64,000 nt of DNA from IMGVR_UViG_3300029258_003221:1-64000, one strand, 5' to 3'; shown: positions 1,165 to 50,702, numbered from the stretch's first letter. Translations and numbers: made by a program. Notes: generated by a model from the letters alone, not told the origin.

Positions 1165-1320
1165 AGTGTTAATCTCCTTGGAATTAAAATCCTATGTTTT
1201 TTGTGCTTTGTGATTTCAAAGCCATTTTCACAGGTATCTATGACCTTCACACATATTGTTTTAGTTTTCGGTGCGCCAAAGTATCGTAAAAAAATGCATT
1301 TGGTGAACGTAAATAGAATA

Positions 1321-1893
1321 ATGGATGAAACACAGAAGCAAATTGTCACAGGAACCGTGTTAGGCGGTTCATCATTATACAAGCAGAGCAAAGGTCGAAA
1401 CTACTTTCTTTCAATGCGTAGTAAAGATCCTGTTTGGCTATGGTACAAAATTGCAATTCTGCAATCTTATTTTACTTCTGATAAACTGACTCAGCAAAAT
1501 GTAACTTATCGTTGCTGTTCTATTTGTCATGAAAACTTCACTGATTTATATCATCTACTTTACAAAGATGACAAAAGGCATCTTACAGAAGAGATTCTCA
1601 ATAAAATTACAGCAACAGGTTTAATGACTTGGTGGCTGGAAGGAGGCGGTTGGGCAGGAAGAGGCAAGAAAAATGCTTATCTTAATACAACAATGTTGGG
1701 AGAAGAAGGGACCAATCTTGTTCAGCGGTATTTCAGTGAATATTATGGAATCAAATGTAATGTCAACAAAAACAAGAATCGACGGAAAGTTTTGCTTAGT
1801 GTTCAGGGGACTTTGAAATTTTGGAAAACCGTTGAAGACAAATTTCCAAATTTTTACATTACAAGAATAGAAAAAGCCCTCAAAGCCAATTAA
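1321..1893 (+). CDS. LAGLIDADG_2-family homing endonuclease homologue with degenerate catalytic motifs
   Basis: QIVTGTVLGGSSL and LMTWWLEGGGW occupy the places of the usual LGDG and W(F/Y)MDDG motifs; start refined to ATG 1321. Confidence 0.7.
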   Translation: MDETQKQIVTGTVLGGSSLYKQSKGRNYFLSMRSKDPVWLWYKIAILQSYFTSDKLTQQNVTYRCCSICHENFTDLYHLLYKDDKRHLTEEILNKITATGLMTWWLEGGGWAGRGKKNAYLNTTMLGEEGTNLVQRYFSEYYGIKCNVNKNKNRRKVLLSVQGTLKFWKTVEDKFPNFYITRIEKALKAN

Positions 1894-1926
1894 GACCTTG
1901 AGGGCTTGATTGTTCAGAAACTGAGA

Positions 1927-2787
1927 TTACTCAGTCATTTTATCTTCTTCGGTCATTTCGTCGGTCATGTCATCAGCGACAACATCTTCAACGATTGGTT
2001 CTTCGATCATTTCATCAGTTGTGTCTTCAACGACTGGCTCTTCAACCATTTCGTCAGTTATGTCTTCAACAACGTCTTCAACGATTGGTTCTTCGACCAT
2101 GTCATCTTCAATGACGATCACATCATCGGTTGTGTCTTCAACAACATCTTCAATGATTGGTTCTTCGACCATGTCATCAGTTGTGTCTTCAACAACGTCT
2201 TCAACGATTGGTTCTTCGACCATGTCATCAGTTGTGTCTTCAACTGGTGCTTCAATGACATCCACAATAACTGGTGCCTCTGGAGCAGAAGGTGGGACAA
2301 CATCGATAACAGTAAACTCATAATGAGTACCGTCTGGAGAGCGGTTTCCAGCATCGTCGATATCAACCAAATAAACCATGCAGTGAGCATCTTCTGGAAG
2401 TGTCAACTTCCATTCCATAATGCTCAAATCCGTAATTTCATGGACTTCCTCTACGCCATCAACGATGACGTGCAGTTCACGACTGACAACGTCGTTAGCT
2501 CCAAGAGCAGGCAGTCCAAGTGTGTAAATATAATTCATGTCAGTTTGATCCTCCATAATTGACAAGATGGTGACTTGCTCAGGTTGTGGTAAAACAACCT
2601 CCGGTTCTGGCTCGGGCGTAGGCTCGGGCTCTGGTTCAGGGATGGGCTCTGGCACAGGAATCGGCTCTGGCGCAGGCACCGGTTCTGGTTCTGTTGTTTC
2701 TGGCTCGATTTTGAACACAGCCCAAATCAAAACGATTTGGATAATCAAGTGCAAAATGCAAGCAATAATGAGCAATAGTATCCACAT
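1927..2787 (-). CDS. Membrane-anchored acidic protein: N-terminal TM, (PE)n linker, FN3-like segment, acidic repeats
   Basis: Hydrophobic N-terminus; EPEPVPAPEP linker; LVDIDDAGNRS resembles an FN3 strand; EEPIVEDVVEDTTDDMV repeats. Confidence 0.7.
   Translation of the reverse strand: MWILLLIIACILHLIIQIVLIWAVFKIEPETTEPEPVPAPEPIPVPEPIPEPEPEPTPEPEPEVVLPQPEQVTILSIMEDQTDMNYIYTLGLPALGANDVVSRELHVIVDGVEEVHEITDLSIMEWKLTLPEDAHCMVYLVDIDDAGNRSPDGTHYEFTVIDVVPPSAPEAPVIVDVIEAPVEDTTDDMVEEPIVEDVVEDTTDDMVEEPIIEDVVEDTTDDVIVIEDDMVEEPIVEDVVEDITDEMVEEPVVEDTTDEMIEEPIVEDVVADDMTDEMTEEDKMTE
1985..2260. repeat. Imperfect tandem coding repeat, about 51-nt (17-aa) unit
   Basis: Recurring acgattggttcttcgaccatgtcatcagttgtgtcttcaacaacgtcttca. 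Confidence 0.85.
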
Positions 2788-5521: not shown

Positions 5522-5671
5522 GGGACAGAGGTGGATTGGTTCACACAAACCAACAATTTGTTGTTGGCCTGCATGGGTTCGAGTCCTGACAGGATGCAAT
5601 GAATTGTTGGGGAGGCAGAATTGCCAGCCGTTTTCGGAACGGCCTTGCAGGTTCGATTCCTGCCTGTCCCA
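5522..5671 (+). ncRNA. Expanded tRNA-like RNA (150 nt)
   Basis: Perfect acceptor stem GGGACAG/CTGTCCC; Leu-like D-arm; perfect T-arm GCAGG-TTCGATT-CCTGC; long variable arm GCCGTT-TTCG-GAACGGC; extra hairpins where the anticodon arm should be. Confidence 0.6.
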
Positions 5672-5676
5672 CTTAT

Positions 5677-5751
5677 GGGTGCGTAGCTCAATTGGCAGAG
5701 CAGCGAGTTCTAGCCTCGTGTTTGTTGCAGGTTCGATCCCTGTCGCACCTT
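5677..5751 (+). tRNA. tRNA with anticodon CTA (amber suppressor), Trp-like body, no encoded CCA
   Basis: Cloverleaf: GGGTGCG/CGCACCT; GCTC/GAGC; GCGAG-TTCTAGC-CTCGT (CTA at 5710-5712); GCAGG-TTCGATC-CCTGT. Confidence 0.85.
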
Positions 5752-5756
5752 TTTTA

Positions 5757-5914
5757 CCGCAGGTAGCTCAGTTGGTAGAGCGTTGCTTGTGTTGAAGCTA
5801 AGACAATGGTGTACAACATTGAATTAGTGAATGCACACGTGCTGTCAAAAGTGGCCACTTTTGGCTGTCATGTAAACATAGCAGAGGTCGGAGGTTCGAG
5901 TCCTCAACTGCGGA
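5757..5914 (+). ncRNA. tRNA-like gene whose anticodon loop is replaced by a 92-nt structured segment
   Basis: CCGCAGG/ACTGCGG; GCTC-AGTTGGTA-GAGC; anticodon stem TTGCT(5783-87)/AGCAG(5880-84); AGGTC; GGAGG-TTCGAGT-CCTCA. Confidence 0.65.
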
Positions 5915-8156: not shown

Positions 8157-8624
8157 ATGACAGATACAGAGGTTACAATGAAAACTATTGACACAACAAA
8201 AATTGAAAAAGGTCACCTGATGGCCTTTGTTTACTACACCAAAGTGACAGATGTCAAAGATAATGGCTCCAGACTTGAAGTTGCTGATCTTGACAATAAC
8301 GAAGAGCCAATGTACGTGACAGGGCAACATCTTGTTGAACGTTCGTATTCAGCAGATTTGTATCAAGAAGAAGTCAAAGAAAACAAAACAAAGGTTGCTG
8401 AGATTTTAACCAAATCTGCGGGAAAACCATTTACTGTTTGTTTTGACAAACAAGATGGCGAAGAAAGAGTCCTTAGAGGCCGCATTATTACACCCGAGCC
8501 TTTTCTGGGTCGATCTAAGGTTGAAGATCTTGATGTTGACCCAAGCCAGCACCGATTTCGTCAAGTTGACCACAGAACACTTCATTGGTTGATCTTGGAT
8601 GGCATCAAATACGTCGTGAAATAA
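8157..8624 (+). CDS. Hypothetical phage protein (SH3/WYL-like barrel)
   Basis: FTVCFDKQDGEERVLRG motif; AAAGGA RBS. Confidence 0.55.
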   Translation: MTDTEVTMKTIDTTKIEKGHLMAFVYYTKVTDVKDNGSRLEVADLDNNEEPMYVTGQHLVERSYSADLYQEEVKENKTKVAEILTKSAGKPFTVCFDKQDGEERVLRGRIITPEPFLGRSKVEDLDVDPSQHRFRQVDHRTLHWLILDGIKYVVK

Positions 8625-20684: not shown

Positions 20685-21131
20685 ATGTTAGAAACAATCA
20701 AGAAGAAATACCTGAATCGAATGAGACAGGAGATGAAACAGGAGTTTCTCAAAGAAGCTGAAAGGGAGTTTGACCGAGAATTCTCTCAGCAGTTTGAGAA
20801 ACCTACTCGTGCCAAGAAGAAGCCGTCTAAGAAAAAGACACGAGCCAAAAAGGTAATGAAGGGTCACACGAAGGCTGAAGATTTCATCCCTGCTGTCACT
20901 GCTTTTCTCAAGAGAAACAACGGCAGAGCTTCTAAGAAGGACATCGCTCAACACATCCTCCTGTCAGGCACTCTGACAGATGTGGATGTCCAGACTCACT
21001 CAGACGGCAAGTATCGGTTCTACAAAACGCTTGACAGAACCCGAAAGATCATGGTTGAGGCAGACGATCTTTCCACAAACAACCGATCTGGTATCTGGGA
21101 ACTCCAACAGAAGCAAACTGTGTTGTTCTAG
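20685..21131 (+). CDS. Mrr N-terminal (winged-HTH) domain protein
   Basis: FIPAVTAFLKRNNGRASKKDI...LTDVD...TRKIMVEADDL...SGIWEL. Confidence 0.65.
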   Translation: MLETIKKKYLNRMRQEMKQEFLKEAEREFDREFSQQFEKPTRAKKKPSKKKTRAKKVMKGHTKAEDFIPAVTAFLKRNNGRASKKDIAQHILLSGTLTDVDVQTHSDGKYRFYKTLDRTRKIMVEADDLSTNNRSGIWELQQKQTVLF

Positions 21132-21502
21132 TTCCCAAACAACCAATCCAAGAAGGGACGCCTTCTCTTTCGTTCTTTTGGCTGTTCCTCTTCGGTTGCA
21201 ATCATAGCCTCATCTTCATTGACATCTGCGGTGATTGTCGGTGGATTTGAGGCTTTTGGTTTACCCACATCCACAATAGCTGGTGATTGATTGTTGGAAA
21301 CCTGATAGGTGATTGCCCCACCCACTCCAACGGTCATGAGCAACAAAGTTGCAATCATTGCATGTTTCCAGTAGGATTTCTTTTGTGGCGGCGGCGTAAT
21401 TTGCCCCATTCCCACAAGCATTCCTCCCCCTGTATCCCCCTTTTCCTGAAGGGATTTCAGGTATTCTGGCAAATCTCCGAGCGGCATAGGTTCTTGACTC
21501 AT
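21128..21502 (-). CDS. Single-TM hypothetical protein
   Basis: Hydrophobic segment; AGGAGG RBS; CATACATA upstream. Confidence 0.6.
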   Translation of the reverse strand: MSQEPMPLGDLPEYLKSLQEKGDTGGGMLVGMGQITPPPQKKSYWKHAMIATLLLMTVGVGGAITYQVSNNQSPAIVDVGKPKASNPPTITADVNEDEAMIATEEEQPKERKRRRPFLDWLFGN

Positions 21503-22921: not shown

Positions 22922-23236
22922 ATGAAATTCAAGGACTTCATGGAAAACAGGCAGCTTGGCAGATCATTGCCCGAAACAGGCTACACAAGCCCACATGCCA
23001 TCATTTATCGAGCCTCACTGGAACCCGATCTCTTGGGAAACCGTGAATATGTGACCATGAGCCGTAAATTCGCAGTCGAACACGCAGAACACCAAGCGGC
23101 TGTGGAAGAAGAGCCATGTAGTGTTTACCGCTATCTGGTGAAGTCCTCGAATGTCTATGAGGCATACAATCCCGGAGAGTATTTCTATGCTGGACCACCG
23201 GTTCAGGGAAGGATCATACATGTTGCAGAAGTTTAA
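22922..23236 (+). CDS. ADP-ribosyltransferase-like small protein with a capsid-targeting-like N-terminus
   Basis: MKFKDFMEN; IYRA...VTMSRKFA...GEYFY resembles an R-S-E triad. Confidence 0.45.
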   Translation: MKFKDFMENRQLGRSLPETGYTSPHAIIYRASLEPDLLGNREYVTMSRKFAVEHAEHQAAVEEEPCSVYRYLVKSSNVYEAYNPGEYFYAGPPVQGRIIHVAEV

Positions 23237-23768
23237 GACATTCCAAAGGTTTCTGACGGAGAAGAAGGATGCTGATTACAGCTACTCCTGCGTCATGTTG
23301 ATGTTCCCCTCCGAAGATGCCAAAAATGTCCTAGACTGGTCCAAGCAACACATCCCGGACGACAAAATCTTTGAGGATGATGACAAAGGCCGAGAAGACG
23401 AAATTCATGTTACAGTCCTGTATGGCCTACATACAAATGAATCTGGTCCCGTGGAAGAGATCATGGAGTCTCATGAGGGTTTTGAGATTGAGCTAGGAGA
23501 AATCTCAAAGTTCGAAAGCAAGGATTATGATGTCATCAAAATCGGAATCTCTGGAGAAGCTTTACATAAAGCCAACAAGACGCTCAGAGAGCTTGATTTC
23601 ACATCGAATTACGATGAATACAAGCCACACTGCACGATTGCCTATGTGAAAAAGGGATCGTGTGACGACCTGCTCGGAAACAAAGACTTCACAGGGCAGA
23701 AGGTTCCCGTCAAGGAATTGGTCTTTAGTCCCGCTGAGGGTGATCGGACAAAGATCGCTCTGACTTGA
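23220..23768 (+). CDS. 2H phosphoesterase (T4 57B/Acb1-like fold)
   Basis: EIHVTVLYG and YKPHCTIAY; start refined. Confidence 0.8.
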   Translation: MLQKFKTFQRFLTEKKDADYSYSCVMLMFPSEDAKNVLDWSKQHIPDDKIFEDDDKGREDEIHVTVLYGLHTNESGPVEEIMESHEGFEIELGEISKFESKDYDVIKIGISGEALHKANKTLRELDFTSNYDEYKPHCTIAYVKKGSCDDLLGNKDFTGQKVPVKELVFSPAEGDRTKIALT

Positions 23769-23815
23769 TTTTGCCACGAGATTTGGTAACATTCTCCTTT
23801 TGCACAAAGGAGATA

Positions 23816-24694
23816 ATGATGCAAACCCTATCCAAGTTAATGGTTGAAGAATACGACGCTGATCTAGGCCAAGAATGGAATCAAGATACACTCGATCTGA
23901 AGACCATGGTTACGGCCTTGTCGTTCCAAAGACACATCTACCTGAACCCGGAAGAGAACGTAAAAGCACGGAAAATCATTGAGAATGTGTTTCGATCACA
24001 TTGTGATTTTGTCGAAGTTCAAGGCGATTATGGCAATGTCATCGGTGGCTGGGATGCCGATCTGTCAGGCAAACACGTGATCGGAGGTCATTACGATGGT
24101 CCTCCGGGCAGCCCCGGAGCCGACGACAACGCCTCGGCAATCTCTTCTCTTTGCCTGCTGGCAAAGAAACTTTCGGACATAAAACCGAAAGATGTTGTCC
24201 TTGTGGCCTTCAATGGAGAAGAAGAAGGTCTTCTAGGTAGCTTTGACTTTGTTGAAAAGATGTCACCAAAGTCAGGCGTGATCCTTGAGATGGTTGGGTA
24301 TTTCGTGGAAGACGAAGATTCTCAGCAGATGCCTCAAGGTTTGCCAGAATACTCCGTAGGAGATTTCTTAGGCATTGTAGGCAATCGCTACACAGGTAGT
24401 TTGGGGAAAGAGCTAACAGACATTGCACGATCCATGAAGCTGAACCTTCCCATCAAAAACCTGAAGATACCTCTCGGCCTTGAAGAAAGATTGCCGGGCC
24501 TGAGTAACACCAGACGCAGTGACCACTACCCGTTCTGGAAAAAGAAGCTCCCGGCTGTCATGCTCACTGATACTGCCGAATTCAGAAATGCCAACTACCA
24601 CAGACGAACAGATACGCCCGATACCCTGAATTACAGTGGAATGGCACAGGTCGTCAGAATGCTTGAGCAGTATTGTCAGAAGTTACTCTCTTAG
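23816..24694 (+). CDS. M28 family peptidase
   Basis: GGHYD, PGADDNASA, FNGEEEG, ILEMVG, RRSDHYPF, NYHRRTD. Confidence 0.9.
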   Translation: MMQTLSKLMVEEYDADLGQEWNQDTLDLKTMVTALSFQRHIYLNPEENVKARKIIENVFRSHCDFVEVQGDYGNVIGGWDADLSGKHVIGGHYDGPPGSPGADDNASAISSLCLLAKKLSDIKPKDVVLVAFNGEEEGLLGSFDFVEKMSPKSGVILEMVGYFVEDEDSQQMPQGLPEYSVGDFLGIVGNRYTGSLGKELTDIARSMKLNLPIKNLKIPLGLEERLPGLSNTRRSDHYPFWKKKLPAVMLTDTAEFRNANYHRRTDTPDTLNYSGMAQVVRMLEQYCQKLLS

Positions 24695-28781: not shown

Positions 28782-29837
28782 TTACTTGATATACCTGTAA
28801 TCCTCGCCAGCCTTCAAGCTTTTTACAGTATTATACATCAATTTAATTGTGCTCTTCACATCCTTCTTGTGAACCATTTCAACAGATGTATGCATGTACT
28901 TCAATGGCAAACTAATCAAACAGGAAGGAATTCCACCAGCAGCTTTGTAAAAAGCTCCTGTGTCCGTTCCACTGTTGCCATTGTATGTGCCGATCTGAAC
29001 TTTGACCTTACTCTTCTTGGCAACCTTCAAAACCTTCTTCAAAAGATTTCTCTGAACATCAGGACCATAATACAAAGCAGGCCCATTCCCGCATGACACA
29101 TCACCACACAATCGTGTATTATACATCGGTGAATGTGAATCATGTGTTACGTCTGTAATGATGGCCACATCCGGCTTGATACTGTGAGCAATCATGTGAG
29201 CGCCACACAAGCCTATCTCTTCCTGAACTGCATTTACTACATGCAAACCAAATGGAAGCTCGTCTTTCTTTTCCTTCAACATTCGAGCAACCTGAGCAAT
29301 CATATAACCGCCCATTCGATTGTCTAAAGCACGACACAAATAGTAATCACCCATGACCTCAAACGGAGCATCATAAGTCATCACACAACCAACATGAATT
29401 CCCATCTCCTCAACTTGCTTTTTGTTCTCAGCTCCAACATCAACATAAAGATTCTTAACCTTTGGTGTTTCTGAGTCACGCTCGTGAATAGCAAGCCAGC
29501 CAAATACGCCACGAACAGTTCCCTTTTGGCCAATTATGTTCACCCGTTGACCCGGAGCAACCATCTCATCTGATCCACCTCGGCGAACAACACTGATATA
29601 ACCCTTTTCATCAATGTGCGAGACTGTCCAACCAATTTCATCGGCATGAGCTTCAATCACCACTTTGTATTTGGCATCAGGGTTTACTACGGCAACTGCT
29701 GTCCCATAAGAATCACAGTATGTTTCATCAACATACTGTGAGATGTAGTCCAGCCAGATCTTCTGACCTTCGGTTTCCCAACCAGTGGGCGACTGAGCAT
29801 TCAAATAACTTTGTAGAAACTTCTCTCGCTTATTCAT
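28782..29837 (-). CDS. M42 family aminopeptidase
   Basis: EAHADEIG, ALDNRMG, VQEEIG, IITDVTH, LKYMHT. Confidence 0.93.
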   Translation of the reverse strand: MNKREKFLQSYLNAQSPTGWETEGQKIWLDYISQYVDETYCDSYGTAVAVVNPDAKYKVVIEAHADEIGWTVSHIDEKGYISVVRRGGSDEMVAPGQRVNIIGQKGTVRGVFGWLAIHERDSETPKVKNLYVDVGAENKKQVEEMGIHVGCVMTYDAPFEVMGDYYLCRALDNRMGGYMIAQVARMLKEKKDELPFGLHVVNAVQEEIGLCGAHMIAHSIKPDVAIITDVTHDSHSPMYNTRLCGDVSCGNGPALYYGPDVQRNLLKKVLKVAKKSKVKVQIGTYNGNSGTDTGAFYKAAGGIPSCLISLPLKYMHTSVEMVHKKDVKSTIKLMYNTVKSLKAGEDYRYIK

Positions 29838-31336: not shown

Positions 31337-32443
31337 TCATATCTCCGTCGAACTGGCGGCGATGTATTCTAAATTACAACTGGCATTGAAGTCTCGGTCG
31401 TGGTGAGTTCCACATCCATCGCAATCCCATTCTCGGTCTGCCAAGGTCAAGTTTTGATTGATCTGACCGCAAATCGAACATGCTTTGCTGGATGGGAAGA
31501 AACGATCCACAGGGACGATCCTGCATCCATACCAAGTTCCTTTATATTCCAGTTGTCTTCTACACTCGAAAAATCCAATATCTGCGATTGATCGAGATAA
31601 TCTTCTGTTCTTCAACATTCCAGACACATTCAAGTCTTCAATTCCAATCGCACGCTTGGTTTTCGCTAATGCTGTTGTCATCTTGTGTAATGTATCTTTA
31701 CGAATGTTGCTGATCTTGAAGTAGAGCCGAGCAAGACGGTTCGCCGCTTTCTTTCGGTTCTGACTTCCTTTTTGTTTGCGACTCAAACTTCTGTTGAGCC
31801 GCTTGAGTTTCCTTAGTTTTTTCTTGAGCGGTTTCGGGTTCTCAAAGGTTGTCCCATCGCTCACGGTTGCCAGTGTTTTGATCCCCAAATCCATACCAAC
31901 CACATCATGTTCGTCCTTCTGGATATTGGGTTCTAACATATCTTCTTCAACTTGAATGCTGACAAACCACCTACCTGCTCTTTCACTTACAGTTGCCGAC
32001 AATATCTTGGCATCGGTTGGCAGGTATCCACTTTCTTTGAGTTTTAGTTTTCCAAGTCTCGGAAGTTGGATTGTTTTCTCTGTTACTTTGATCGTTCCCG
32101 TCAGTCGAAACCCGCCGATGCCTTTTCTCTTACTCTTGAATTTCGGGAACTTTCCTCGCTTCTTGAAGAAATTGTCAAAAGCACGATCTAGGTTTCTAAG
32201 GGCTTCCTGTGGGCTACATTTGCTGACTTCATACATCCAAGGGAATGTATCTTTCTTGAGGTCGTTGAGGCGACGGTGAAGTTCAATGGCGTTGGGAATC
32301 TTATCTTTGACTTCCATCGCTTGCTTCTTCTGGTTCATGCCCCAATTATATGTGAACCTAGCAGCACCAGCATGTTTTAGACATGCGGTTCGCTGCTTGT
32401 TGTTCAACCTCAATTCGGTCTTATAGCCCCTCTGTATCTTCAC
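31337..32443 (-). CDS. tnpB: TnpB RNA-guided nuclease
   Basis: RuvC I VGMDLGIK, RuvC II GIEDLNV, zinc finger CSICG...CDGCG, RuvC III DRDFNAS. Confidence 0.96.
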   Translation of the reverse strand: MKIQRGYKTELRLNNKQRTACLKHAGAARFTYNWGMNQKKQAMEVKDKIPNAIELHRRLNDLKKDTFPWMYEVSKCSPQEALRNLDRAFDNFFKKRGKFPKFKSKRKGIGGFRLTGTIKVTEKTIQLPRLGKLKLKESGYLPTDAKILSATVSERAGRWFVSIQVEEDMLEPNIQKDEHDVVGMDLGIKTLATVSDGTTFENPKPLKKKLRKLKRLNRSLSRKQKGSQNRKKAANRLARLYFKISNIRKDTLHKMTTALAKTKRAIGIEDLNVSGMLKNRRLSRSIADIGFFECRRQLEYKGTWYGCRIVPVDRFFPSSKACSICGQINQNLTLADREWDCDGCGTHHDRDFNASCNLEYIAASSTEI

Positions 32444-32861
32444 ACTCCTCCTCTGCTATGAACTTGCCGAAATCATGTTCATTGAACTCAGCAGTTTCAT
32501 AGACATCCCATCCAAGAACAACAGGGTCTTCGCCAACAGGCAAAGGCTGTCCATGTCCATCTAACAATGTGCCATCACGTTTTACATCAATGTGTTTAGC
32601 TCGCCAGCCATCGTACCAAAAGCCACCACGATTGAATGTGATGCAACCTTTGGGTTTGTATTCAACAACAATGTCAAATGTTGCTTCCTGCCCCATACTA
32701 ACAGGCTTGCGTTGCTTGAATTCTTTGATCTTGCAACTTTTGGGTTCTTTGCTCATCCACTCTGTTTCATTCAACTTATTCATTAGACCAAACATCAACT
32801 TTGTTGGGTCTTTCGTAACCAACTCGAACTTCAAGTAAGTTGGATTCACATTATCGGTCAT
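32421..32861 (-). CDS. Cargo hypothetical protein
   Basis: ORF track; overlaps both neighbours. Confidence 0.7.
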   Translation of the reverse strand: MTDNVNPTYLKFELVTKDPTKLMFGLMNKLNETEWMSKEPKSCKIKEFKQRKPVSMGQEATFDIVVEYKPKGCITFNRGGFWYDGWRAKHIDVKRDGTLLDGHGQPLPVGEDPVVLGWDVYETAEFNEHDFGKFIAEEECEDTEGL

Positions 32862-34849
32862 GCAACCTCCTTCAAATAATGTTCTCTCGCCGCCGCAGCT
32901 TCCTCTATGGTGTCATAAGTCCCGACACTTTGACGACCAACTCTTGCTGACCATCTCCCATTGGCTTGTTTGTAAACACCCTTATGTCCAGAGCCAGCCA
33001 ATTTTTGGCAATCGCATTTTGAGTTTGCCTTCATATTGCCGGGCAATCGTTGAAACTCTTTGCCATGCTCGCACCTGACTGTCACATACTCAAAAAATCC
33101 AGCATATTCTGACGCCAACTCCCACCCTTTATCCTCAAGAAACTGCAACAATTTTTGCTTTCCGTAATCCAAGCAGTTAGTTCTTACACAATCGCATTGG
33201 GCGTGTGGCCGCACGGCAGATCGACGCTTCATAGTGAAAACTTCACCATGTTCGCACCTAATTTGGATTTCACCCTCGCCACTATATTCAGATAGCAACT
33301 CCCACCCACGATTGGCAAAGATTTCAGTCAAGTTATCCTTACCCATCTCAGTCATTCTTTCGCCAGAGGCGATGTCGCAACAACGTGGACAACCACACTC
33401 GTTCTTGAAGTTCTGCACCAGCGTCGTCCAGACATGACCCTTATCGCACTGGATGGTCATATCTCCGTAGTATCCTTTATACTCCGAGAGACGCTTCCAG
33501 CCCCTCCGCTCCATCTCAGTGTCAATAATTTGAGTTTGGTGTTCTTTATCTTGCGGACGTTTAGATGAATAATCCCAAGAGTAGAATTTCTCTTTCTTGC
33601 AATCCATCGAAACAGACGAATCTTCGTAAAGCCAATCTCTAATTCGGAGTGCTGGCGTTCCACTGTAGCTGAACAATGACGCTGTGGAGTTCTTTAGTTC
33701 TCGATCATACTCCTCTTTGCTTCGGTCTATCACAGTATTCTTCGAGACATTGGCTTCTTCAACAATGACATCCACCACATCCTCAAGGAATTTAGGAACA
33801 GCCCCGCAAATGCTGAATGTTGGAGTTTTGTAAACCTTATGCCTGTATTTCGTAGTGCCAACGCTCACTGACCCGTCGCCATCGAAAAGTCCTCGGATGA
33901 AGTGTCTTCTCAACTCTTTAGGAATATCAGGAAAAGAAACAAGAAAGGTTTTGTTCGGAATAACGCCATGTTTCATCAAGGCTTCTACGAAACCAGTGTG
34001 ACAACATTCAAGAGTGTATTTGGTTTTCTTTCCGCCCTTATTTTTGCTGCTCACATGATATGGACCAAGAACCTTGCCTGTATATCCGATTGCATCCTTG
34101 AACTTCTCTAAATGTCTCTTCCCTTCTACAACCAACGAAATACGAAGCCGGTGTGGATTGAGTGCAACTGATCCGTCTGCATAGATGAACCCAAGCCAAT
34201 ATGCCTTTTCTTCTGTGTCTATCTCATCAAAGAAGTTGAAATCAAATGTGTATTTTCTAATCAAACCAGCAGAGCGGCGACTGCCAACTTTCAGTGTTAC
34301 TGCACGCCCGATGATGGCATTCCAAGTTCTATTGGGCAAGCCAGCTTGGATGAACTCTTGACTTTCCTTGGTGTAACTTGAGCGAAGAAAATCATCTTCC
34401 TCAGATGACCACGAAAAATCAGGCTTACTCAAGCCCAGTTTGACCGCCTTGTTCCTAATCTCGGATTCAGTCTTGTCTGAAAGCAATTCAAGCAATTCCG
34501 AATTGCTCATGGTGGCATAATTGGATTTCAACAAATCTAACTCTTTAGAAGTCCATTTCTTTCGCTTTCTGGTAAGCCCCAATCGGCAGGCTCTATCTTT
34601 GATTGCCTTGTATTTGCGGTTCGGAAGCAAATTCGACCATTGATCGGCTGCGATCTTGCCATAATACTGCCTGACAACATCATCTTCCGCCAACTGCCAT
34701 TTAGTATCTTGCGTCAAGCCAAGCCGAGATAATTTGTGTCTTATAGAAGTGTCACTCTTATCCAACTCGTTACTCAACCAATCAGTCGGTTTATCCGCAT
34801 TTTCTACAAGAAATGCCTCTTCTTTCTTAGTCCAATGCTTTCCGCTCAT
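32858..34849 (-). CDS. Multidomain LAGLIDADG endonuclease: 4 Myb-like repeats, double LAGLIDADG, 3 Zn-ribbon repeats, AP2-like domain
   Basis: WTxxE repeats; YWLGFIYADGSV and FIRGLFDGDGSV; GW.LLSEY...C..GH...C repeats; SGHKGVY...GRWSARV...GTYDTIEEAAAAR. Confidence 0.9.
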   Translation of the reverse strand: MSGKHWTKKEEAFLVENADKPTDWLSNELDKSDTSIRHKLSRLGLTQDTKWQLAEDDVVRQYYGKIAADQWSNLLPNRKYKAIKDRACRLGLTRKRKKWTSKELDLLKSNYATMSNSELLELLSDKTESEIRNKAVKLGLSKPDFSWSSEEDDFLRSSYTKESQEFIQAGLPNRTWNAIIGRAVTLKVGSRRSAGLIRKYTFDFNFFDEIDTEEKAYWLGFIYADGSVALNPHRLRISLVVEGKRHLEKFKDAIGYTGKVLGPYHVSSKNKGGKKTKYTLECCHTGFVEALMKHGVIPNKTFLVSFPDIPKELRRHFIRGLFDGDGSVSVGTTKYRHKVYKTPTFSICGAVPKFLEDVVDVIVEEANVSKNTVIDRSKEEYDRELKNSTASLFSYSGTPALRIRDWLYEDSSVSMDCKKEKFYSWDYSSKRPQDKEHQTQIIDTEMERRGWKRLSEYKGYYGDMTIQCDKGHVWTTLVQNFKNECGCPRCCDIASGERMTEMGKDNLTEIFANRGWELLSEYSGEGEIQIRCEHGEVFTMKRRSAVRPHAQCDCVRTNCLDYGKQKLLQFLEDKGWELASEYAGFFEYVTVRCEHGKEFQRLPGNMKANSKCDCQKLAGSGHKGVYKQANGRWSARVGRQSVGTYDTIEEAAAAREHYLKEVA

Positions 34850-35532
34850 ACCTCCACAACCTCTTTCTGTTCCGCAGGCACAAGACCATCTTGTGCTACC
34901 GCCGCCAACTTCTCTTCTTTCTTTTTCCTGCGATTTTCAGCACTACGCTTGCCGTAAATCTTATTGCTGAACGAGGACATCAATGTGAGCATATCTTCTA
35001 CAAGTTCTTGCTCGTAGGACTTGCCCAACACATTCTCCATCCACTCGATCTGAACACCATGACTGGCGAAGAAGTCGTCCAAGAATTGAAAGTTGAAGCG
35101 AGTCAAACGATCTTTGTGTTCGACCACAACCTTGCTGATCTTCTTGTCCTTGACCAACTCAAACAGGTTTCTCAACTTCGGTCTGGTGTCCGACATGCCT
35201 GATCCTACTTCTTCGTAGGATTTGACAATCTTGTACTGCTTCTTGACGCAGTAGGACAAGAGCCGCCCGTTCTGTCGTTCTAGGTCGCCCTTTTTCTTCT
35301 GTTCGTGGGAACTTACTCTTGCGTAAGTTGCGACCTTGACTTCACTTTCTTTCTTGTGTTCCACGATCTCGCCGCAGAAGGCTTTGATGTCTGATAATCT
35401 GTACCTTCTGTGATTTCCCGGCGTTTTGACTGGAACTAGCTTTCCTTCTTTATCCCATTCTCTGAGCGTATCGAGGCAGACACCGAGGATGTCGGCTGTT
35501 TTACCGATGCTCAACAACTTCTGTTCGTTCAT
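34846..35532 (-). CDS. tnpA: IS607 serine-recombinase transposase
   Basis: MerR-like HTH (TLREWDKEG...TPGNHRRY); YARVSS; VVEHKDRLTRF; ELVEDML; start refined to ATG 35532. Confidence 0.96.
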   Translation of the reverse strand: MNEQKLLSIGKTADILGVCLDTLREWDKEGKLVPVKTPGNHRRYRLSDIKAFCGEIVEHKKESEVKVATYARVSSHEQKKKGDLERQNGRLLSYCVKKQYKIVKSYEEVGSGMSDTRPKLRNLFELVKDKKISKVVVEHKDRLTRFNFQFLDDFFASHGVQIEWMENVLGKSYEQELVEDMLTLMSSFSNKIYGKRSAENRRKKKEEKLAAVAQDGLVPAEQKEVVEV

Positions 35533-35704
35533 TCTCAATGAGTCCTTTTTCAAGGAACGCATCGAGCCATTCATCGTATTGTTCCTGAAACTCCTCTACT
35601 GTCGGTGTTTCCTCCAAATCAAAGAGAATCGGATGGATCGTACCATCCTCCATCTCAAACTCGGTTTTGGTTACTCTAACGATTTTTCGACTCAACATGT
35701 TCAT
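35501..35704 (-). CDS. Small acidic protein, first ORF inside the IS607 element
   Basis: AGGAGAG RBS; overlaps the tnpA start. Confidence 0.65.
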   Translation of the reverse strand: MNMLSRKIVRVTKTEFEMEDGTIHPILFDLEETPTVEEFQEQYDEWLDAFLEKGLIENERTEVVEHR

Positions 35705-46803: not shown

Positions 46804-49329
46804 TTACATTTCTGAAAAATCTATCTCTTCTTCATCCTGCTCTTTAGCGTAATCCTTGATATCCAGATTGTATTTCTGAATATCTTCTTCTGTTGGATCA
46901 GGTAAAGGCGTGGCTCCTGTTGGTCCTTCCATTCCGCCTGATGGGCCTTGATCATCTCCTGTTGGAGCAGGTGCTCCACCCATTCCCATATCATCTTCAC
47001 CGCCTTCTTCACCTTCTGGCGGTTGATCTCCCAACATAGGACTTGGTCCACCAGCTTCTCCACCAATTTCGGTTTCGTCTGGTCCGGGAAGTCCAACGCC
47101 CAAAAGCATTGGGTTTTGAGCAATGATTTGGAGTTTGAGTTCTTCCATCTTTTGGATTTTAAGACGAGCAAGCATCTTCAGAGCTTCTTCTTCATCGTAT
47201 TTCATCCACTTGGTAAGAATATCAAAGTCCGACATGAGTTGTGCTCCTTTCAAAGCACCGGCGTTTTGAATTCTACCAGCTACAACTTCTGATCTTGTTA
47301 GCTCACGCCAATCAGAAGGTGGAGTTAACTTAATTTCCAAATCCTCATAGGCTTCTTTTGGGAAACCAAGCAGCGTTAAGTGACGGTTGCAAATTTCCCA
47401 AAAAGCGTTCTGAATGTGAGATTGAAGTCGTTCGATCATGCGAGCGAACTTCACATCCTGTGCAGACAGGGTGATTCTTGTACTTTGAACATCTTCGTTA
47501 TTGAAATAGTTCTTAGGGAAATTCAGAGCTGTAAACAGTTTATTTCTGAAGTAGACTGTATCATCGATTTCACCAAGATTCTGAGCACCCGGTAAAGTTT
47601 CAACTCTTGTGTTGGAGTTGGGCCTAACAGGAATCCAGTAATCTTCATCGGCTGCTGGTGCGTGCCAACGTTCTTCAACACTGGAGGCACCCGGCAATCC
47701 AGATTTTCCGGTAGCAACCTTTTTCTTTTTGAACTGATCTTTCATTCGTTCAACAAAGGCTTCCGCCCTGTAAGGCGGAAGCTGGAACGTGTCAATATAG
47801 AACACTCTACGTTCTGGTGCTCTTGTCAATCGATAAACCACCATGGCATCTTCCATCAATCTCAATTGATGAGCAGGTCCACGTGCTGCTTCAATAAGAC
47901 TTACACCATATGGATAGAATGTTTGTCTATCATCCCCGACACGAATATGCACAACCTGATCTGCTGCGAATCTAATAGCTGTAGCTTGTTGTAAATCTGC
48001 TTCTGTTGCCTGTGTGACTTCCACACGGGAAAGGCTTTGGTAGTCAGGCCCTTCTTTAGACTGTTGGAATTCAACCAATTTTCCTTTGGTTGTTTCAATT
48101 CGATACATGCTGTCAGGAGGCAATGGAACAAGACCTACGATACCATGTTTAGGGTTTTCCAAATCAATAATGACTTCATAAAAGAAGTCGCCCATGATGA
48201 ATAATCTTTTGGCCATGTCCCAACATGTATTTTGGTCCATATTAAGCATGTCACGATGAAACAATAGATATTCACATTCTTCTTTGACTGATTCATTGCC
48301 GCAAACAACCTGCATTACTCTGCCATCTTCATTTTTCTGGCAATTGTGAACAACTCCCCAGTTTGTACAGAAGTTATGATGTTTCTCAACAGTTAGGTCA
48401 TAGACATCAATCTCTTCCCAAGGTTGTATTCCGACAACTCTTCTTCGATCTTCTTTGCGACCGAGCCATTTCATCTCTTTGTTTGAGAATCCAGCTTTTT
48501 CGATTCGGCTTTTAATTGTCTTGAAGTCATGACCTGTCATGTCAACAATCTGCTGAGTCGTCAATCCTTCAGAGATGTATCGACAAAGTTTGTTAACGCT
48601 TTCAAGTTCAGGATTGTCTTTGCCCGTAGCCCATTCGTCGGCAAACTGTCGTTCGTGAATCCAGCCTTTGCGATGAGTATAAATTCTAGGGAACTGATTG
48701 ACTTTGATTTCGGTAATATCCGGGTTTGGCGAAATGCGATAGAAAGGCATGAGTTCATCACCGGAATTTAGTTCACCTGCTTCTCTCCATGTACCTTTTC
48801 TGGTCATAATTCGGTGATCAGGTGTGCAGATCACATAATTGCCATCATCAAAAATGATTTTGATTGTTTTGGCTTTTTTGGTTTTACGTGCATCAAATGC
48901 CCAGCCAAGCGTATAATCGCCTTTATCCTGATCATAGCAATAGACTAAGAATCGCTCGTTTTCATTGACGAGATCTTCGATCTTTTTATATCCATGTGGT
49001 GTGGCGATAAGAGTATCGCCAGCCAAACAGGTCTCATCTGCGAAAACGGTCATTGCCATTTCGATTTCCGGCATATTTCGCAGTCGTTCGTATTCTTTGT
49101 AGCGATGAACTCTATTAGTGACGGTACTTAAATCTACGAAATCATTAGTGTCTCGAAGGCGAATGGCCCCTCGTCCACCACCTGTAGTTCCGTCATTGCC
49201 ACCCCTGATGTCAGGAATAGCTCCATCAACTGGATATCCCGCTCCACTGGCATCTCGGTCTCTGCGTCTTGCGAGTGGATCATCAGTGAAAGCGTAAGTG
49301 AAAGTTTTGAAATAATCCCACCAAGCCAT
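46804..49329 (-). CDS. gp20: Portal protein, T4 gp20-like, with an intein
   Basis: RLMEDAMVVYRLTRAPERRVFYID, EDYWIP, VETLPGAQNLGEIDD, FARMIERLQ. Confidence 0.96.
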   Translation of the reverse strand: MAWWDYFKTFTYAFTDDPLARRRDRDASGAGYPVDGAIPDIRGGNDGTTGGGRGAIRLRDTNDFVDLSTVTNRVHRYKEYERLRNMPEIEMAMTVFADETCLAGDTLIATPHGYKKIEDLVNENERFLVYCYDQDKGDYTLGWAFDARKTKKAKTIKIIFDDGNYVICTPDHRIMTRKGTWREAGELNSGDELMPFYRISPNPDITEIKVNQFPRIYTHRKGWIHERQFADEWATGKDNPELESVNKLCRYISEGLTTQQIVDMTGHDFKTIKSRIEKAGFSNKEMKWLGRKEDRRRVVGIQPWEEIDVYDLTVEKHHNFCTNWGVVHNCQKNEDGRVMQVVCGNESVKEECEYLLFHRDMLNMDQNTCWDMAKRLFIMGDFFYEVIIDLENPKHGIVGLVPLPPDSMYRIETTKGKLVEFQQSKEGPDYQSLSRVEVTQATEADLQQATAIRFAADQVVHIRVGDDRQTFYPYGVSLIEAARGPAHQLRLMEDAMVVYRLTRAPERRVFYIDTFQLPPYRAEAFVERMKDQFKKKKVATGKSGLPGASSVEERWHAPAADEDYWIPVRPNSNTRVETLPGAQNLGEIDDTVYFRNKLFTALNFPKNYFNNEDVQSTRITLSAQDVKFARMIERLQSHIQNAFWEICNRHLTLLGFPKEAYEDLEIKLTPPSDWRELTRSEVVAGRIQNAGALKGAQLMSDFDILTKWMKYDEEEALKMLARLKIQKMEELKLQIIAQNPMLLGVGLPGPDETEIGGEAGGPSPMLGDQPPEGEEGGEDDMGMGGAPAPTGDDQGPSGGMEGPTGATPLPDPTEEDIQKYNLDIKDYAKEQDEEEIDFSEM
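48343..49029 (-). mobile_element. Intein (229 aa) in the portal
   Basis: N-terminal CLAGDTLIAT, block B CTPDHRIMT, C-terminal VYDLTVEKHHNF...VVHN followed by +1 Cys. Confidence 0.95.
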
Positions 49330-49386: not shown

Positions 49387-50184
49387 TTGAAAGTTTTGAC
49401 GTGTTCAGATAACGCTCTTGGAAATGCAATTTCTGATTTGTTGCCTTTGCTTTCGATCTGGAAAAGGCGTAATGCGACAATTCATGGCATTTTGAGAAAC
49501 AAACATGCTTATCGTCTATTCAGAGAAACTCCTTATTTTGATAGAATTTTACCACTCTATGACAAAGATGATTTGTGGCATGATTTAATCAAAGATGTAC
49601 CTCAATGGTTTGAAGATTACGATAAGGTCTATGTTGTCAATAACAGGCAAATGCCGGGGGTGGAAAAAAGCGAAAAGGTACCTGTTGATTACCGTCCAGC
49701 AATGAGGGTGGCAGAATATGGAGAGCTTTTTTCGCCAGAAGATATATTGCTGGATATCAATTGGTATCAAAAGTACTACAAAGACTTCAAATGTCACAGC
49801 AAAACAGTGTTATTGAACACCCAATCAACCAGTTTTCATCGATGTTATACGAGGCCATTAAAGGAAGAATTGGCTAAATTAGGATTTGATGTTCGTGAAT
49901 TTAATTACAGAAGAGATATTCGAGAGAATTTACATTTAGTTCATCAGGCAGCTCATATTTTAACTGTTGACACATCAACCATGTGGTTGGCTAGAACATT
50001 AGGGAAGGTTCCTTATGTTTTTATGGCACGTGAATCAGGGACTCTTCCTGCTTTTGGCCCAAACACAGAAAAGAGGCATGGGCTTAAAAACTTGATACCA
50101 TGGAAGGAAAATCTAAACGATACAGCTCCTGACTTTATTGCCAGTCAATTTTCAGGAGCTATTCAAACCATTCCGGTTATTTGA
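49387..50184 (+). CDS. GT9 (heptosyltransferase-like) glycosyltransferase
   Basis: N-terminal ALGNAISDLLPLL; C-terminal LTVDTSTMWLARTLGKVPYVF. Confidence 0.65.
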   Translation: MKVLTCSDNALGNAISDLLPLLSIWKRRNATIHGILRNKHAYRLFRETPYFDRILPLYDKDDLWHDLIKDVPQWFEDYDKVYVVNNRQMPGVEKSEKVPVDYRPAMRVAEYGELFSPEDILLDINWYQKYYKDFKCHSKTVLLNTQSTSFHRCYTRPLKEELAKLGFDVREFNYRRDIRENLHLVHQAAHILTVDTSTMWLARTLGKVPYVFMARESGTLPAFGPNTEKRHGLKNLIPWKENLNDTAPDFIASQFSGAIQTIPVI

Positions 50185-50702
50185 TGGAAGTCTTTGCTGT
50201 GTCTTTTTCCATTTCTGGAAGAGAACACGTAGCTATTAGCCGTAAAACTTCTTCCAACAAACTCTTTATCGCCTTTGAGCCCCCATGCTTTATCTTTTTT
50301 GACATAAGCGATGGTTACATGTGGGACATAGCTTTCGTAGCGATTGGAATAGACAACATTTGATTTCAACTTTTCATTAAGTGCACAAATTTGTTGACTG
50401 TGCACTTTAACGAATACGACATCGAACAGATTTGATCTTGTAAAAAGGTCAATTTCACCAAGTTGTATATCAACACTGGATTCGTTTCTGAATGTCTCGA
50501 ATGTCCTACGAGGTTTATCTGAATGGATTCCATAGAGAATCGTGACATGCATTTCATTTTCACGTCCGAAAAAGGGGTCTTTCGGGTCTCGAAAAAGAAT
50601 ATGATCAGGGATACTCTCATTACCCCATTGCATAATCTCTTCTGCTAAATAATGGGGCACATCGACGTGGACAGACGAGAAATCATAACGAATATTCTGC
50701 AT
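50163..50702 (-). CDS. 2H phosphoesterase, paralogue of 23220..23768
   Basis: GRENEMHVTILYG and YVPHVTIAYVKK. Confidence 0.8.
   Translation of the reverse strand: MQNIRYDFSSVHVDVPHYLAEEIMQWGNESIPDHILFRDPKDPFFGRENEMHVTILYGIHSDKPRRTFETFRNESSVDIQLGEIDLFTRSNLFDVVFVKVHSQQICALNEKLKSNVVYSNRYESYVPHVTIAYVKKDKAWGLKGDKEFVGRSFTANSYVFSSRNGKRHSKDFHQITGMV

What the first reader, a model, noticed from the sequence alone, without database searches (positions are those of the whole stretch)
5677..5751. Trp-like amber suppressor tRNA with non-canonical features
Seen: a complete cloverleaf with loop TT-CTA-GC, G1:T72, a 7-nt variable region, U73 and no encoded CCA. The D-arm and overall layout resemble bacterial tRNA-Trp, where CCA to CTA is one change. 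Established: the E. coli Trp-derived amber suppressor Su7 inserts Gln as well as Trp. Inference: a deliberately weak suppressor, enough for the neighbouring TAG genes without extending all TAG-terminated genes.
Basis: partly seen in the sequence, partly recalled or inferred. Interest (0 to 1): 0.8.

Follow-up and report, generated by a model that had tools for sequence, protein, structure and literature searches.

The report
Amber-suppressor tRNA in marine jumbo phage
A well-formed tRNA gene that should read the UAG stop codon sits in a large T4-like marine phage whose own genes use the ordinary genetic code; this kind of gene is already known from many phages.

Summary
Window 5677-5751(+) is a complete tRNA with anticodon CUA (ARAGORN; Rfam 52.2 bits). 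It has G1-U72, U73, a 7-nt variable region, the loop UU-CUA-GC and no encoded CCA. The window is the start of a 234.6-kb IMG/VR contig of a T4-like marine/sediment jumbo phage.

- **Trp ancestry:** the body (positions 2-25, U72) best matches cellular tRNA-Trp, but tRNA-Lys(CUU) is almost as close. The 7-nt loop is one change from a phage tRNA-Gln(CUG) loop and at least three from any Trp loop. G73, the Trp discriminator, is absent.
- **"Neighbouring TAG genes":** none exist. TAG ends 10 of 93 ORFs, no gene is split by TAG, and the structural genes are intact in code 11.
- **Relative:** the 595-kb phage LR756511 also uses the standard code and has one CUA tRNA at the matching position. Six stem pairs differ there on both sides yet stay paired.

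This is most likely a working, probably inefficient, UAG-reading tRNA charged through its anticodon (Gln or Lys), kept in a genome where TAG is the rarest stop. Expression, charging and suppression are untested. It is a new member of a known kind, of moderate-to-low interest. Two conserved tRNA-like genes with large insertions flank it.

The parts
5677..5751 (+). tRNA gene with anticodon CUA (reads UAG): G1-U72, U73, 7-nt variable region, loop UU-CUA-GC, no encoded CCA
   Evidence: ARAGORN; Rfam RF00005 52.2 bits, full length; cloverleaf parse with all 21 pairs standard
5709..5711 (+). anticodon CTA (positions 34-36)
   Evidence: ARAGORN gives the anticodon at position 34 of a gene starting at 5677; sequence
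5522..5671 (+). upstream tRNA-like gene, 5 nt from the CUA tRNA: 7-bp acceptor stem, D-arm-like and canonical T arm, a long variable-arm-like hairpin, and a roughly 61-nt extra hairpin instead of a normal anticodon arm. Probably part of the same precursor transcript.
   Evidence: Rfam tRNA 29.4 bits with a 78-nt insertion; MFE -65.9 kcal/mol, z=-4.5; no listed substitution in the 98.4%-identical strain variant
5757..5914 (+). downstream tRNA-like gene, 5 nt from the CUA tRNA: Asn(GUU)-like cloverleaf with an 83-91-nt structured insertion in the anticodon loop, plus G7-A66 and G49-A65 mismatches
   Evidence: Rfam tRNA 33.4 bits; ARAGORN with introns: tRNA-Asn(gtt) with an 83-nt insertion; fold z=-2.4
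5752..5756 (+). 3' trailer UUUUA after U73; no CCA, so the 3' end must be trimmed and CCA added after transcription
   Evidence: sequence
8157..8624 (+). 155-aa ORF of unknown function. It is the synteny anchor: its 53-54%-identical homologue lies 1.5 kb downstream of the only CUA tRNA of phage LR756511.
   Evidence: tblastn; alignment A1

Best explanation
This is a functional phage-encoded amber-suppressor-type tRNA (tRNA-Sup-CUA). It is probably transcribed on the + strand with the two flanking tRNA-like RNAs as one precursor. RNase P and a 3' endonuclease or exonuclease would trim it, and a CCA-adding enzyme would supply the missing CCA. It lacks the main acceptor-end marks of any one synthetase (G73 for Trp or Gln, A73 for Lys). 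It carries U35 in a Gln-type loop, so a synthetase that reads the anticodon most likely charges it: GlnRS or the Glu-tRNA-Gln amidation route, or else LysRS. It would insert Gln (or Lys) at UAG in competition with RF1. G37/C38 in place of the A37/A38 usual after A36 should make decoding inefficient. The phage's own genes use the standard code and TAG is their rarest stop, so read-through costs the phage little. The benefit is probably one of two things: buffering or pre-adaptation of the kind proposed as the first step towards code 15, or low-level read-through of host or a few phage UAG stops. Shown: gene, structure, anticodon, lack of recoding, a positional counterpart in a distant relative, strain-level conservation. 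Inferred: transcription, maturation, the amino acid, efficiency and biological benefit.
For: - **The tRNA is real and intact.** ARAGORN and Rfam (52.2 bits) agree on the coordinates, and all stems and tertiary positions are present.
- **It is kept by selection.** LR756511 shares 75.6% of its major capsid protein with this phage, and other proteins at 35-57%. Its single CUA tRNA among 63 tRNAs lies outside the main tRNA arrays. It sits 1.5 kb upstream of the homologue of window ORF 8157-8624, in the same orientation. Of LR756511's tRNAs it is the most similar to the window tRNA (75%). Six stem pairs differ on both sides while pairing is kept.
- **It is conserved between strains.** In a strain variant 98.4% identical over 3.6 kb, the only listed change between 5224 and 5934 is C>T at 5738, which is T-loop position 60. 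About 11 changes would be expected at the flanking rate.
- **Neither genome is recoded.** TAG ends 10 of 93 window ORFs.
- **The loop is Gln-type.** It is one change from a phage tRNA-Gln(CUG) loop. Four other viral CUA tRNAs have the same loop, and two of them have Gln-like bodies.
- **U73 and a missing CCA are common in viral CUA tRNAs.** U73 occurs in 9 of 38.
- **Literature.** Only TAG-to-Gln is seen in recoded phages of standard-code hosts, and suppressor acquisition by standard-code phages is proposed as a step towards recoding (bioRxiv 10.1101/2021.08.26.457843).
Against: - No RNA-seq run holding this sequence could be listed, so expression, CCA addition and charging are unobserved.
- No UAG-containing target gene was found in the window or in LR756511, so the benefit is conjecture.
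- U73 is a poor discriminator for E. coli-type GlnRS, TrpRS and LysRS (established identity rules, from my own knowledge), so the tRNA might be charged badly or not at all.
- The host is unknown.
- Two more distant relatives of the anchor gene (L147, L148) have no tRNA within 6 kb.
- Orthology with the LR756511 tRNA rests on one anchor gene; the genes in between are unrelated.
- Only the first 64 kb of a 234.6-kb contig was examined for TAG use.
Confidence: 0.55

Rival explanations
1. It is an evolutionary leftover: a phage tRNA (Trp, Lys or Gln type) whose anticodon and identity positions have drifted. It may be transcribed but is poorly charged and has no selected suppressor function.
For: It has several off-consensus features together: G1-U72, U73, G37/C38, a 7-nt variable region and three terminal G-U pairs. 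Its Rfam score is lower than that of the LR756511 counterpart (52 against 65 bits). It sits between two clearly aberrant tRNA-like genes. No UAG target genes were found. It is absent near the anchor gene in L147 and L148.
Against: All stems and tertiary nucleotides are intact. A CUA tRNA is retained at the matching position in a phage whose proteins are only 35-76% identical, with six compensated stem changes. The cluster region is far less variable than its flanks between strains.
Confidence: 0.2
2. It has a role outside decoding. The three adjacent tRNA-shaped RNAs would act as decoys or competitors for host tRNA-targeting defences or for tRNA-processing or modifying enzymes, or as regulatory stable RNAs like the stable RNAs C and D of the T4 tRNA cluster. 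On this reading the CUA triplet is incidental.
For: The tight three-gene cluster has 5-nt spacers, and two members cannot decode normally. The whole cluster is conserved between strains. The anticodon loop context is unusual. The T4 precedent and phage tRNAs that evade anticodon nucleases are known from the literature (my own knowledge, not tested here).
Against: The anticodon CUA is kept in the LR756511 counterpart although the rest of the anticodon arm has changed. That points to selection on the triplet itself. LR756511 has no flanking tRNA-like genes. CUA tRNAs are recurrent in large viral contigs.
Confidence: 0.15
3. It is part of a stop-codon recoding system (code 15, TAG = Gln) that operates in genes lying outside the 64-kb window, such as lysis or other late genes.
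For: Suppressor tRNAs are strongly associated with TAG-recoded phages, and recoding can be confined to late or lysis modules. 170 kb of the contig was not examined. TAG is rare as a stop here (10 of 93).
Against: The structural module is in the window (terminase, portal, prohead protease, major capsid protein) and is intact in code 11. Treating TAG as sense gains less ORF coverage than treating TGA or TAA as sense. The complete relative LR756511 shows no excess of TAG-split genes: 23 for TAG, against 69 for TAA and 25 for TGA. No release factor or synthetase was found among the 50 largest window ORFs.
Confidence: 0.07

Closest known systems
Suppressor tRNA(CUA) genes of TAG-recoded (code 15) phages: crAss-like, Lak and other gut phage clades
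   Same: Phage-encoded class-I tRNA with anticodon CUA in a large phage genome. Probably charged by a host synthetase, and Gln is the expected amino acid.
   Different: This phage, and its 595-kb relative, use the standard code with TAG as a real though rare stop. No release factor or synthetase module is nearby. The habitat is marine/sediment and not the gut.
CUA tRNA of uncultured huge phage LR756511.1 (complement 179588-179661)
   Same: It is the positional counterpart, upstream of the homologous 152/155-aa ORF. The D arm and acceptor positions 4-7 are the same, the variable region is also longer than 5 nt (6 nt), and the genome also uses the standard code.
   Different: The LR756511 copy looks canonical: G1:C72, G73 and the loop CU-CUA-AA, at 65 bits. 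Pairs 2:71, 3:70, 29:41, 30:40, 31:39 and 51:63 are all exchanged, and it has no flanking tRNA-like genes.
E. coli Su7 (supU), the tRNA-Trp-derived amber suppressor that is charged with Gln as well as Trp
   Same: A CUA anticodon on a Trp-type body: 5' half, U72, G2:C71 and G3:C70. Mischarging driven by the anticodon is the likely rule here too. Su7's properties are from my own knowledge.
   Different: Su7 differs from tRNA-Trp only at position 35 and keeps A1:U72, G73 and the loop CU-CUA-AA. This tRNA has G1-U72, U73, U32, G37, C38 and a 7-nt variable region. It is a natural phage gene and not a laboratory mutant.
Phage tRNA-Gln(CUG) genes with the loop UU-CUG-GC, and viral CUA tRNAs with the loop UU-CUA-GC (L315, L326)
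   Same: The anticodon loop is identical apart from position 36. One of them (L326) also has U73 and no CCA.
   Different: Those tRNAs have Gln-type D arms and A/U-type first pairs. This one has the GCUCAAUUGGCAGAGC D arm and a GGGUGCG acceptor stem typical of Trp or Lys.

Membership tests
Canonical elongator tRNA (Rfam RF00005) | Cloverleaf with 7/4/5/5-bp stems, a 7-nt anticodon loop with U33, and conserved tertiary nucleotides; score above the family threshold | tested here: met
   52.2 bits against a gathering score of 29, model positions 1-71; ARAGORN; all 21 pairs standard. The 7-nt variable region is off-consensus.
Amber suppressor tRNA | Anticodon 5'-CUA-3' at positions 34-36 | tested here: met
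   ARAGORN gives the anticodon cta at position 34; the loop is UUCUAGC.
Amber suppressor tRNA | Expressed, CCA-matured, aminoacylated, and inserting an amino acid at UAG | not testable with these tools
   No RNA run holding the sequence could be listed; only DNA metagenomes hold it.
tRNA-Trp-derived suppressor (Su7-like) | Body (acceptor stem, D arm, T arm) of tRNA-Trp | tested here: inconclusive
   Positions 2-25 occur exactly in 20 cellular tRNA-Trp but also in 7 Lys(CUU), 2 Val and 1 Asn. The best identity is 82% for Trp against 79% for Lys. The masked HMM classifier scores Lys 29.0 and Trp 16.3 bits at 65% cross-validated accuracy. The only LR756511 tRNA matching positions 2-7 is its tRNA-Trp.
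tRNA-Trp-derived suppressor (Su7-like) | Discriminator G73 | tested here: not met
   It is U73 here. Viral tRNA-Trp have G73 in 30 of 32 cases, and all 20 cellular Trp matches have G73.
tRNA-Trp-derived suppressor (Su7-like) | Trp anticodon-loop context C32 U33 ... A37 A38, differing from Trp only at position 35 | tested here: not met
   The loop is U32 U33 CUA G37 C38. None of 34 viral Trp has G37, and the minimum loop distance to any Trp is 3.
tRNA-Gln(CUG)-derived suppressor (supE-like) | Gln anticodon loop with only position 36 changed | tested here: met
   UUCUAGC against the UUCUGGC of a phage tRNA-Gln(CUG); distance 1, and Gln is the only isotype at that distance.
tRNA-Gln(CUG)-derived suppressor (supE-like) | Gln-type body: U1:A72 or A1:U72, G73, Gln-type D arm | tested here: not met
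   G1-U72, U73 and the D arm GCUCAAUUGGCAGAGC. The Gln HMM scores 22.7 bits and ranks 4th. G2:C71, G3:C70 and G10 are compatible with Gln.
tRNA-Pyl (the ARAGORN label) | Pyl-specific architecture (3-nt variable loop, 6-bp anticodon stem, shortened D loop, atypical T loop) and pylS/pylBCD genes | tested here: not met
   The D loop has 8 nt with G18 G19, the T loop is the canonical UUCGA, and the variable region has 7 nt. There is no PylS-like hit among the 50 largest ORFs. The architecture criteria are from my own knowledge.
Code-15 (TAG = Gln) recoded phage | In-frame TAG codons in phage genes, and a gain in coding density when TAG is read as sense | tested here: not met
   Window: 14 TAG-split candidates against 52 for TGA and 34 for TAA, and none is convincing. 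The structural genes are intact. Treating TAG as sense gives the smallest coverage gain in the window and in LR756511. The rest of the contig was not examined.
Code-15 (TAG = Gln) recoded phage | A code-change module (release factor 2 and/or a synthetase next to the suppressor) | tested here: not met
   The neighbours are a weak Rieske-like ORF, a SAM methyltransferase and ORFs of unknown function. There is no RF or aaRS domain in the 50 largest window ORFs.

The most novel reading that the evidence does not exclude
A lineage of standard-code marine mega/jumbo phages has kept a dedicated UAG-reading tRNA at a fixed genomic position while rebuilding its identity elements. Here that produced a Trp/Lys-type body carrying a Gln-type anticodon loop and U73. 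On this reading the tRNA is not there for the phage's own genes. It is a weapon or regulator: read-through of host UAG stops, or of the stops of competing recoded phages. It may be made together with two novel insertion-bearing tRNA-like RNAs as one functional unit.
Probability: 0.12. Interest if true: 0.65.

Novelty: new member of a known kind. Interest (0 to 1): 0.33.

Why it matters
Suppressor tRNAs are the agents of stop-codon recoding in phages, and how recoding begins is an open question. A CUA tRNA held at the same position in two standard-code giant marine phages, in genomes where TAG is a rare stop, fits the proposed 'suppressor first, recoding later' route. It gives a natural pair for testing that route. 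The mixed identity signals (Trp/Lys body, Gln loop, U73) also make it a useful case for asking which host synthetase phage suppressors recruit. As a single gene, though, it adds one more example to a class already catalogued by the hundred.

Tried and rejected
1. **Near-identical or distant DNA matches in 50,697 phage records.** There were none apart from generic tRNA similarity.
2. **Orthologues through flanking proteins in IMG/VR.** Only the source contig came back. The metagenome scan gave six loci, and none had an informative tRNA upstream.
3. **Exact and degenerate searches for the anticodon arm in viral contigs.** The exact arm is unique to the source contig. The pattern combining the D arm with the loop gave only chance, non-tRNA matches.
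4. **Expression.** No RNA run could be listed. The DNA runs gave strain variation only, and the 'joints' across 5781-5886 are ordinary tRNAs of other organisms aligning to the shared D and T arms, not intron-less alleles.
5. **Isotype classifier.** Per-isotype HMMs with the anticodon masked reached only 65% cross-validated accuracy, with Lys acting as a sink class. I treat the result as weak evidence.
6. **Known ribozymes or introns.** I looked in and around the flanking tRNA-like genes, including HDV-like/theta ribozymes associated with phage suppressor tRNAs. Rfam at E<=10 found nothing beyond tRNA. The insertions have no homologue in the window or in LR756511.
7. **Promoter and terminator scan.** Counts were no higher than in shuffled sequence.
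8. **tRNA-Pyl, tRNA-Sec, tmRNA.** Rejected on architecture.
9. **TAG read-through extensions of the 10 TAG-terminated ORFs.** Extensions are 2-52 codons, and none is compelling.

Full report
**1. What is there**

ARAGORN finds exactly one tRNA in the window, at 5677-5751(+), with anticodon CTA. Rfam's tRNA model matches the same coordinates end to end at 52.2 bits (threshold 29; E=2.5e-8 for the window).
- G1-U72 tops an otherwise Watson-Crick acceptor stem.
- The D arm is GCUC/AAUUGGCA/GAGC.
- The anticodon stem is GCGAG/CUCGU and the loop is UU-CUA-GC.
- The variable region has 7 nt.
- The T arm is GCAGG/UUCGAUC/CCUGU.
- The discriminator is U73 and the trailer is UUUUA, with no CCA.

All 21 stem pairs are standard pairs. 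The universal tertiary nucleotides are present.

**2. Where it is**

The window is the first 64 kb of IMG/VR contig IMGVR_UViG_3300029258_003221, which is 234,631 bp long. It encodes a T4-type large terminase, a gp20 portal protein carrying an intein, a prohead protease and a gp23 major capsid protein. Several DNA metagenomes from seawater and sediment, from different studies, hold the sequence. No phage record matches it at the DNA level. The nearest record by capsid protein is the 595-kb uncultured phage LR756511.1, at 75.6% amino-acid identity. Other shared proteins are 35-57% identical.

**3. Is the genome recoded?**

No, on everything examined.
- Standard-code ORFs of at least 100 codons already cover 90% of the window. 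Reading TAG as sense adds less coverage than reading TGA or TAA as sense.
- In a greedy gene set, TAG ends 10 of 93 ORFs, TAA 47 and TGA 36.
- Same-frame ORF pairs split by a single stop number 14 for TAG, 52 for TGA and 34 for TAA. The TAG cases overlap better ORFs in other frames or the tRNA genes themselves.
- Read-through of the ten TAG-terminated ORFs adds only 2-52 codons.
- The complete relative LR756511 behaves the same way. It has 85% coverage in code 11. TAG ends 150 of 820 ORFs. It has 23 TAG-split pairs, against 69 for TAA and 25 for TGA, and shows no TAG-specific lack of downstream start codons.

The 50 largest window ORFs include no release factor, synthetase or tRNA-modifying enzyme.

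**4. Is it maintained?**

I assembled LR756511 from 12 fetched pieces. It has 63 tRNAs and a tmRNA. Only one of those tRNAs has the anticodon CUA, at complement 179588-179661, and it lies far from the main tRNA arrays.

That tRNA is 1.5 kb upstream of, and in the same orientation as, the homologue (53-54% identical) of window ORF 8157-8624. The window ORF lies 2.4 kb downstream of the window tRNA. In a 595-kb genome, such a coincidence has a chance of about 1%.

Among LR756511's tRNAs, this one is also the most similar to the window tRNA, at 75%. Pairs 2:71, 3:70, 29:41, 30:40, 31:39 and 51:63 differ on both sides while staying paired. The CUA triplet is unchanged.

A strain variant in another study's seawater run is 98.4% identical over 3.6 kb. 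It shows one listed change between 5224 and 5934: C>T at 5738, which is T-loop position 60, a position where either pyrimidine is usual. At the flanking rate about 11 changes would be expected. One caveat applies: 16 of that contig's 56 differences were not printed. The printed list runs in order and stops at 7410, so the hidden ones probably lie beyond that point.

These points argue for selection on a working RNA. Against universality, two more distant relatives of the anchor gene have no tRNA within 6 kb.

**5. Which tRNA is it like?**

*D arm.* It is generic. The exact 20-mer occurs in viral tRNA-Thr, Asn, Trp, Lys and others.

*Body.* In one genome per species of Bacteria and Archaea, positions 2-25 occur exactly in 31 ARAGORN-called tRNAs. 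Twenty are tRNA-Trp, many of them from Planctomycetota but also from other lineages, including Chloroflexota (Anaerolineae), Bacteroidota, Bdellovibrionota, Actinomycetota and Proteobacteria. Seven are tRNA-Lys(CUU), two Val, one Asn and one unassigned.
- The best overall identities, with the anticodon masked, are 82% and 81% for Trp and 79% for Lys.
- The 3' acceptor strand CGCACCU, with U72, is the Trp form (A1:U72). The Lys form has C72.
- G1 is the Lys form, although a Bacteroidota (Lewinellaceae) tRNA-Trp also has G1-U72.
- The only LR756511 tRNA with the same positions 2-7 is its tRNA-Trp.

*Against Trp.*
- G73 is found in 30 of 32 viral and all 20 cellular Trp matches. Here the base is U.
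- All 34 viral Trp have A37.
- An anticodon-masked HMM classifier puts Lys (29.0 bits), Val and Asn (24.7) and Gln (22.7) ahead of Trp (16.3). It is only 65% accurate in cross-validation.

*Loop.* The 7-nt loop UUCUAGC is one substitution from the loop UUCUGGC of a phage tRNA-Gln(CUG). It is at least 3 substitutions from every Trp or Lys loop in an 838-tRNA viral reference set. The first 120 hits of a viral scan yielded four other CUA tRNAs with this same loop. Two of them have Gln-type bodies, and one of those also has U73 and no CCA.

*Conclusion.* The gene looks like a mosaic: a Trp/Lys-type body, a Gln-type anticodon loop, and a discriminator belonging to neither. 'Trp-like' is defensible for the body only. 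'One change from CCA' is not an adequate description.

**6. Are the odd features unusual for phage suppressors?**

Among 38 distinct viral CUA tRNAs, many from contigs of 200-600 kb, the discriminator is G in 16, A in 12, U in 9 and C in 1. Several lack CCA. U73 and a missing CCA are therefore within the normal range for this class. The G37/C38 loop and the 7-nt variable region are rarer. The LR756511 counterpart also has an over-long variable region of 6 nt.

**7. Mechanism proposed**

*Shown:* a structurally intact CUA tRNA gene under apparent constraint in standard-code phages.

*Inferred from established tRNA biology (my own knowledge, not tested here):*
- The three closely spaced genes (5-nt spacers) are transcribed together, as in T4-type tRNA clusters.
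- RNase P and a 3' nuclease release the tRNA, and CCA is added afterwards.
- With C35 and G73 both missing, TrpRS is an unlikely charger.
- U35-reading enzymes are the usual chargers of CUA tRNAs that lack strong acceptor identity. These are GlnRS, or non-discriminating GluRS followed by amidation, or LysRS.
- G37/C38 after A36 departs from the A37/A38 'extended anticodon' that favours efficient UAG reading, so suppression is probably weak.

*Likely benefit:* TAG ends only about one ORF in ten here, and read-through extensions are short, so the cost to the phage is low. The benefit could be protection against amber mutations. It could be a first step towards recoding, as proposed for gut phages (10.1101/2021.08.26.457843). 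Or it could be interference with termination at host UAG stops. I give the functional-suppressor reading 0.55. The rivals are a drifting relic (0.2), a non-decoding role for the cluster of tRNA-like RNAs (0.15), and recoding confined to unexamined parts of the genome (0.07).

**8. The neighbours**

The element at 5522-5671 scores 29.4 bits as a tRNA. It has a perfect 7-bp acceptor stem, a canonical T arm and a long variable-arm-like hairpin. A 15-bp hairpin enclosing a second T-arm-like stem-loop replaces a normal anticodon arm (MFE z=-4.5).

The element at 5757-5914 scores 33.4 bits. It reads as a tRNA-Asn(GUU)-like cloverleaf with an 83-91-nt two-hairpin insertion in the anticodon loop and two stem mismatches.

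Neither insertion matches a known RNA family, the rest of the window, or LR756511. Neither changes in the strain variant. ARAGORN also predicts insertion-bearing tRNA-like genes in LR756511. A 2026 survey mentions predicted introns in jumbo-phage tRNAs (PMC13037316). These elements are recorded as observations made in passing and deserve their own follow-up.

**9. Verdict**

The feature is real and the description is accurate. It is a new member of the known class of phage-encoded amber suppressor tRNAs. Its points of interest are that it occurs in standard-code marine giant phages, has a positional counterpart in a distant relative, and carries mixed identity signals.

Noticed in passing
window 5522-5671 (+): A tRNA-like gene with perfect acceptor and T arms and a long variable-arm-like hairpin. 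A roughly 61-nt hairpin, which itself holds a T-arm-like stem-loop, replaces a usable anticodon arm. It is strongly structured (z=-4.5) and unchanged in a strain variant.
   Followed up: partly
window 5757-5914 (+): A tRNA-Asn(GUU)-like gene with an 83-91-nt two-hairpin insertion in the anticodon loop. That is too short for a group I intron, and it has no Rfam match. It also has G7-A66 and G49-A65 mismatches.
   Followed up: partly
window 46804-49329 (-): The T4-type portal protein (gp20) carries an intein splicing domain at residues 113-329. Its LR756511 homologue aligns over the full 841 aa.
   Followed up: no
window 1201-1893 (+) and 1906-2562 (+): A LAGLIDADG homing-endonuclease ORF is followed in the same frame, after a single TAA, by a 218-aa ORF. 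This may be a free-standing or intron-borne endonuclease next to a split host gene.
   Followed up: no
window 31337-35574 (-): A cluster of mobile-element genes: TnpB/Cas12f-like (31337-32443), a 663-aa ORF with LAGLIDADG and HNH endonuclease matches (32858-34849), and a MerR-HTH serine recombinase (34846-35574). The recombinase and TnpB resemble an IS607-type pair.
   Followed up: no
window 23151-23768 (+) and 50163-50702 (-): Two paralogous 2H-phosphoesterase ORFs (2'-5' RNA ligase superfamily / anti-CBASS Acb1-like). Both match the same LR756511 region. They could degrade cyclic nucleotides or work on RNA ends.
   Followed up: no
window 23765-24694, 28782-29837, 54110-55282: Three metallo-aminopeptidase genes (M28, M42, M28) in one phage window. 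Sugar-nucleotide and glycan genes are also present: glycosyltransferase, pyruvyl transferase, RmlD-like, cytidylyltransferases and PIG-L deacetylase.
   Followed up: no
LR756511.1, whole record (loci L131-L142): 63 tRNAs and a tmRNA (tag ANPEFAMAA). ARAGORN with introns predicts further insertion-bearing tRNA-like genes, including a tRNA-Leu(UAA) with a 700-nt insertion at complement 409169-409955, the classic site of a group I intron.
   Followed up: no
viral loci L182-L223 and L056: Among 38 distinct viral CUA tRNAs, many on contigs of 200-600 kb, U73 occurs in 9. Viral tRNA-Trp have U73 in 1 of 32. Most of the U73 CUA tRNAs lack an encoded CCA. A U discriminator may be a recurrent trait of phage amber suppressors.
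   Followed up: partly
window 20685-21131 (+) and 21128-21502 (-): Two convergent ORFs end on the same palindromic CTAG, so both use TAG as their stop on opposite strands.
   Followed up: no
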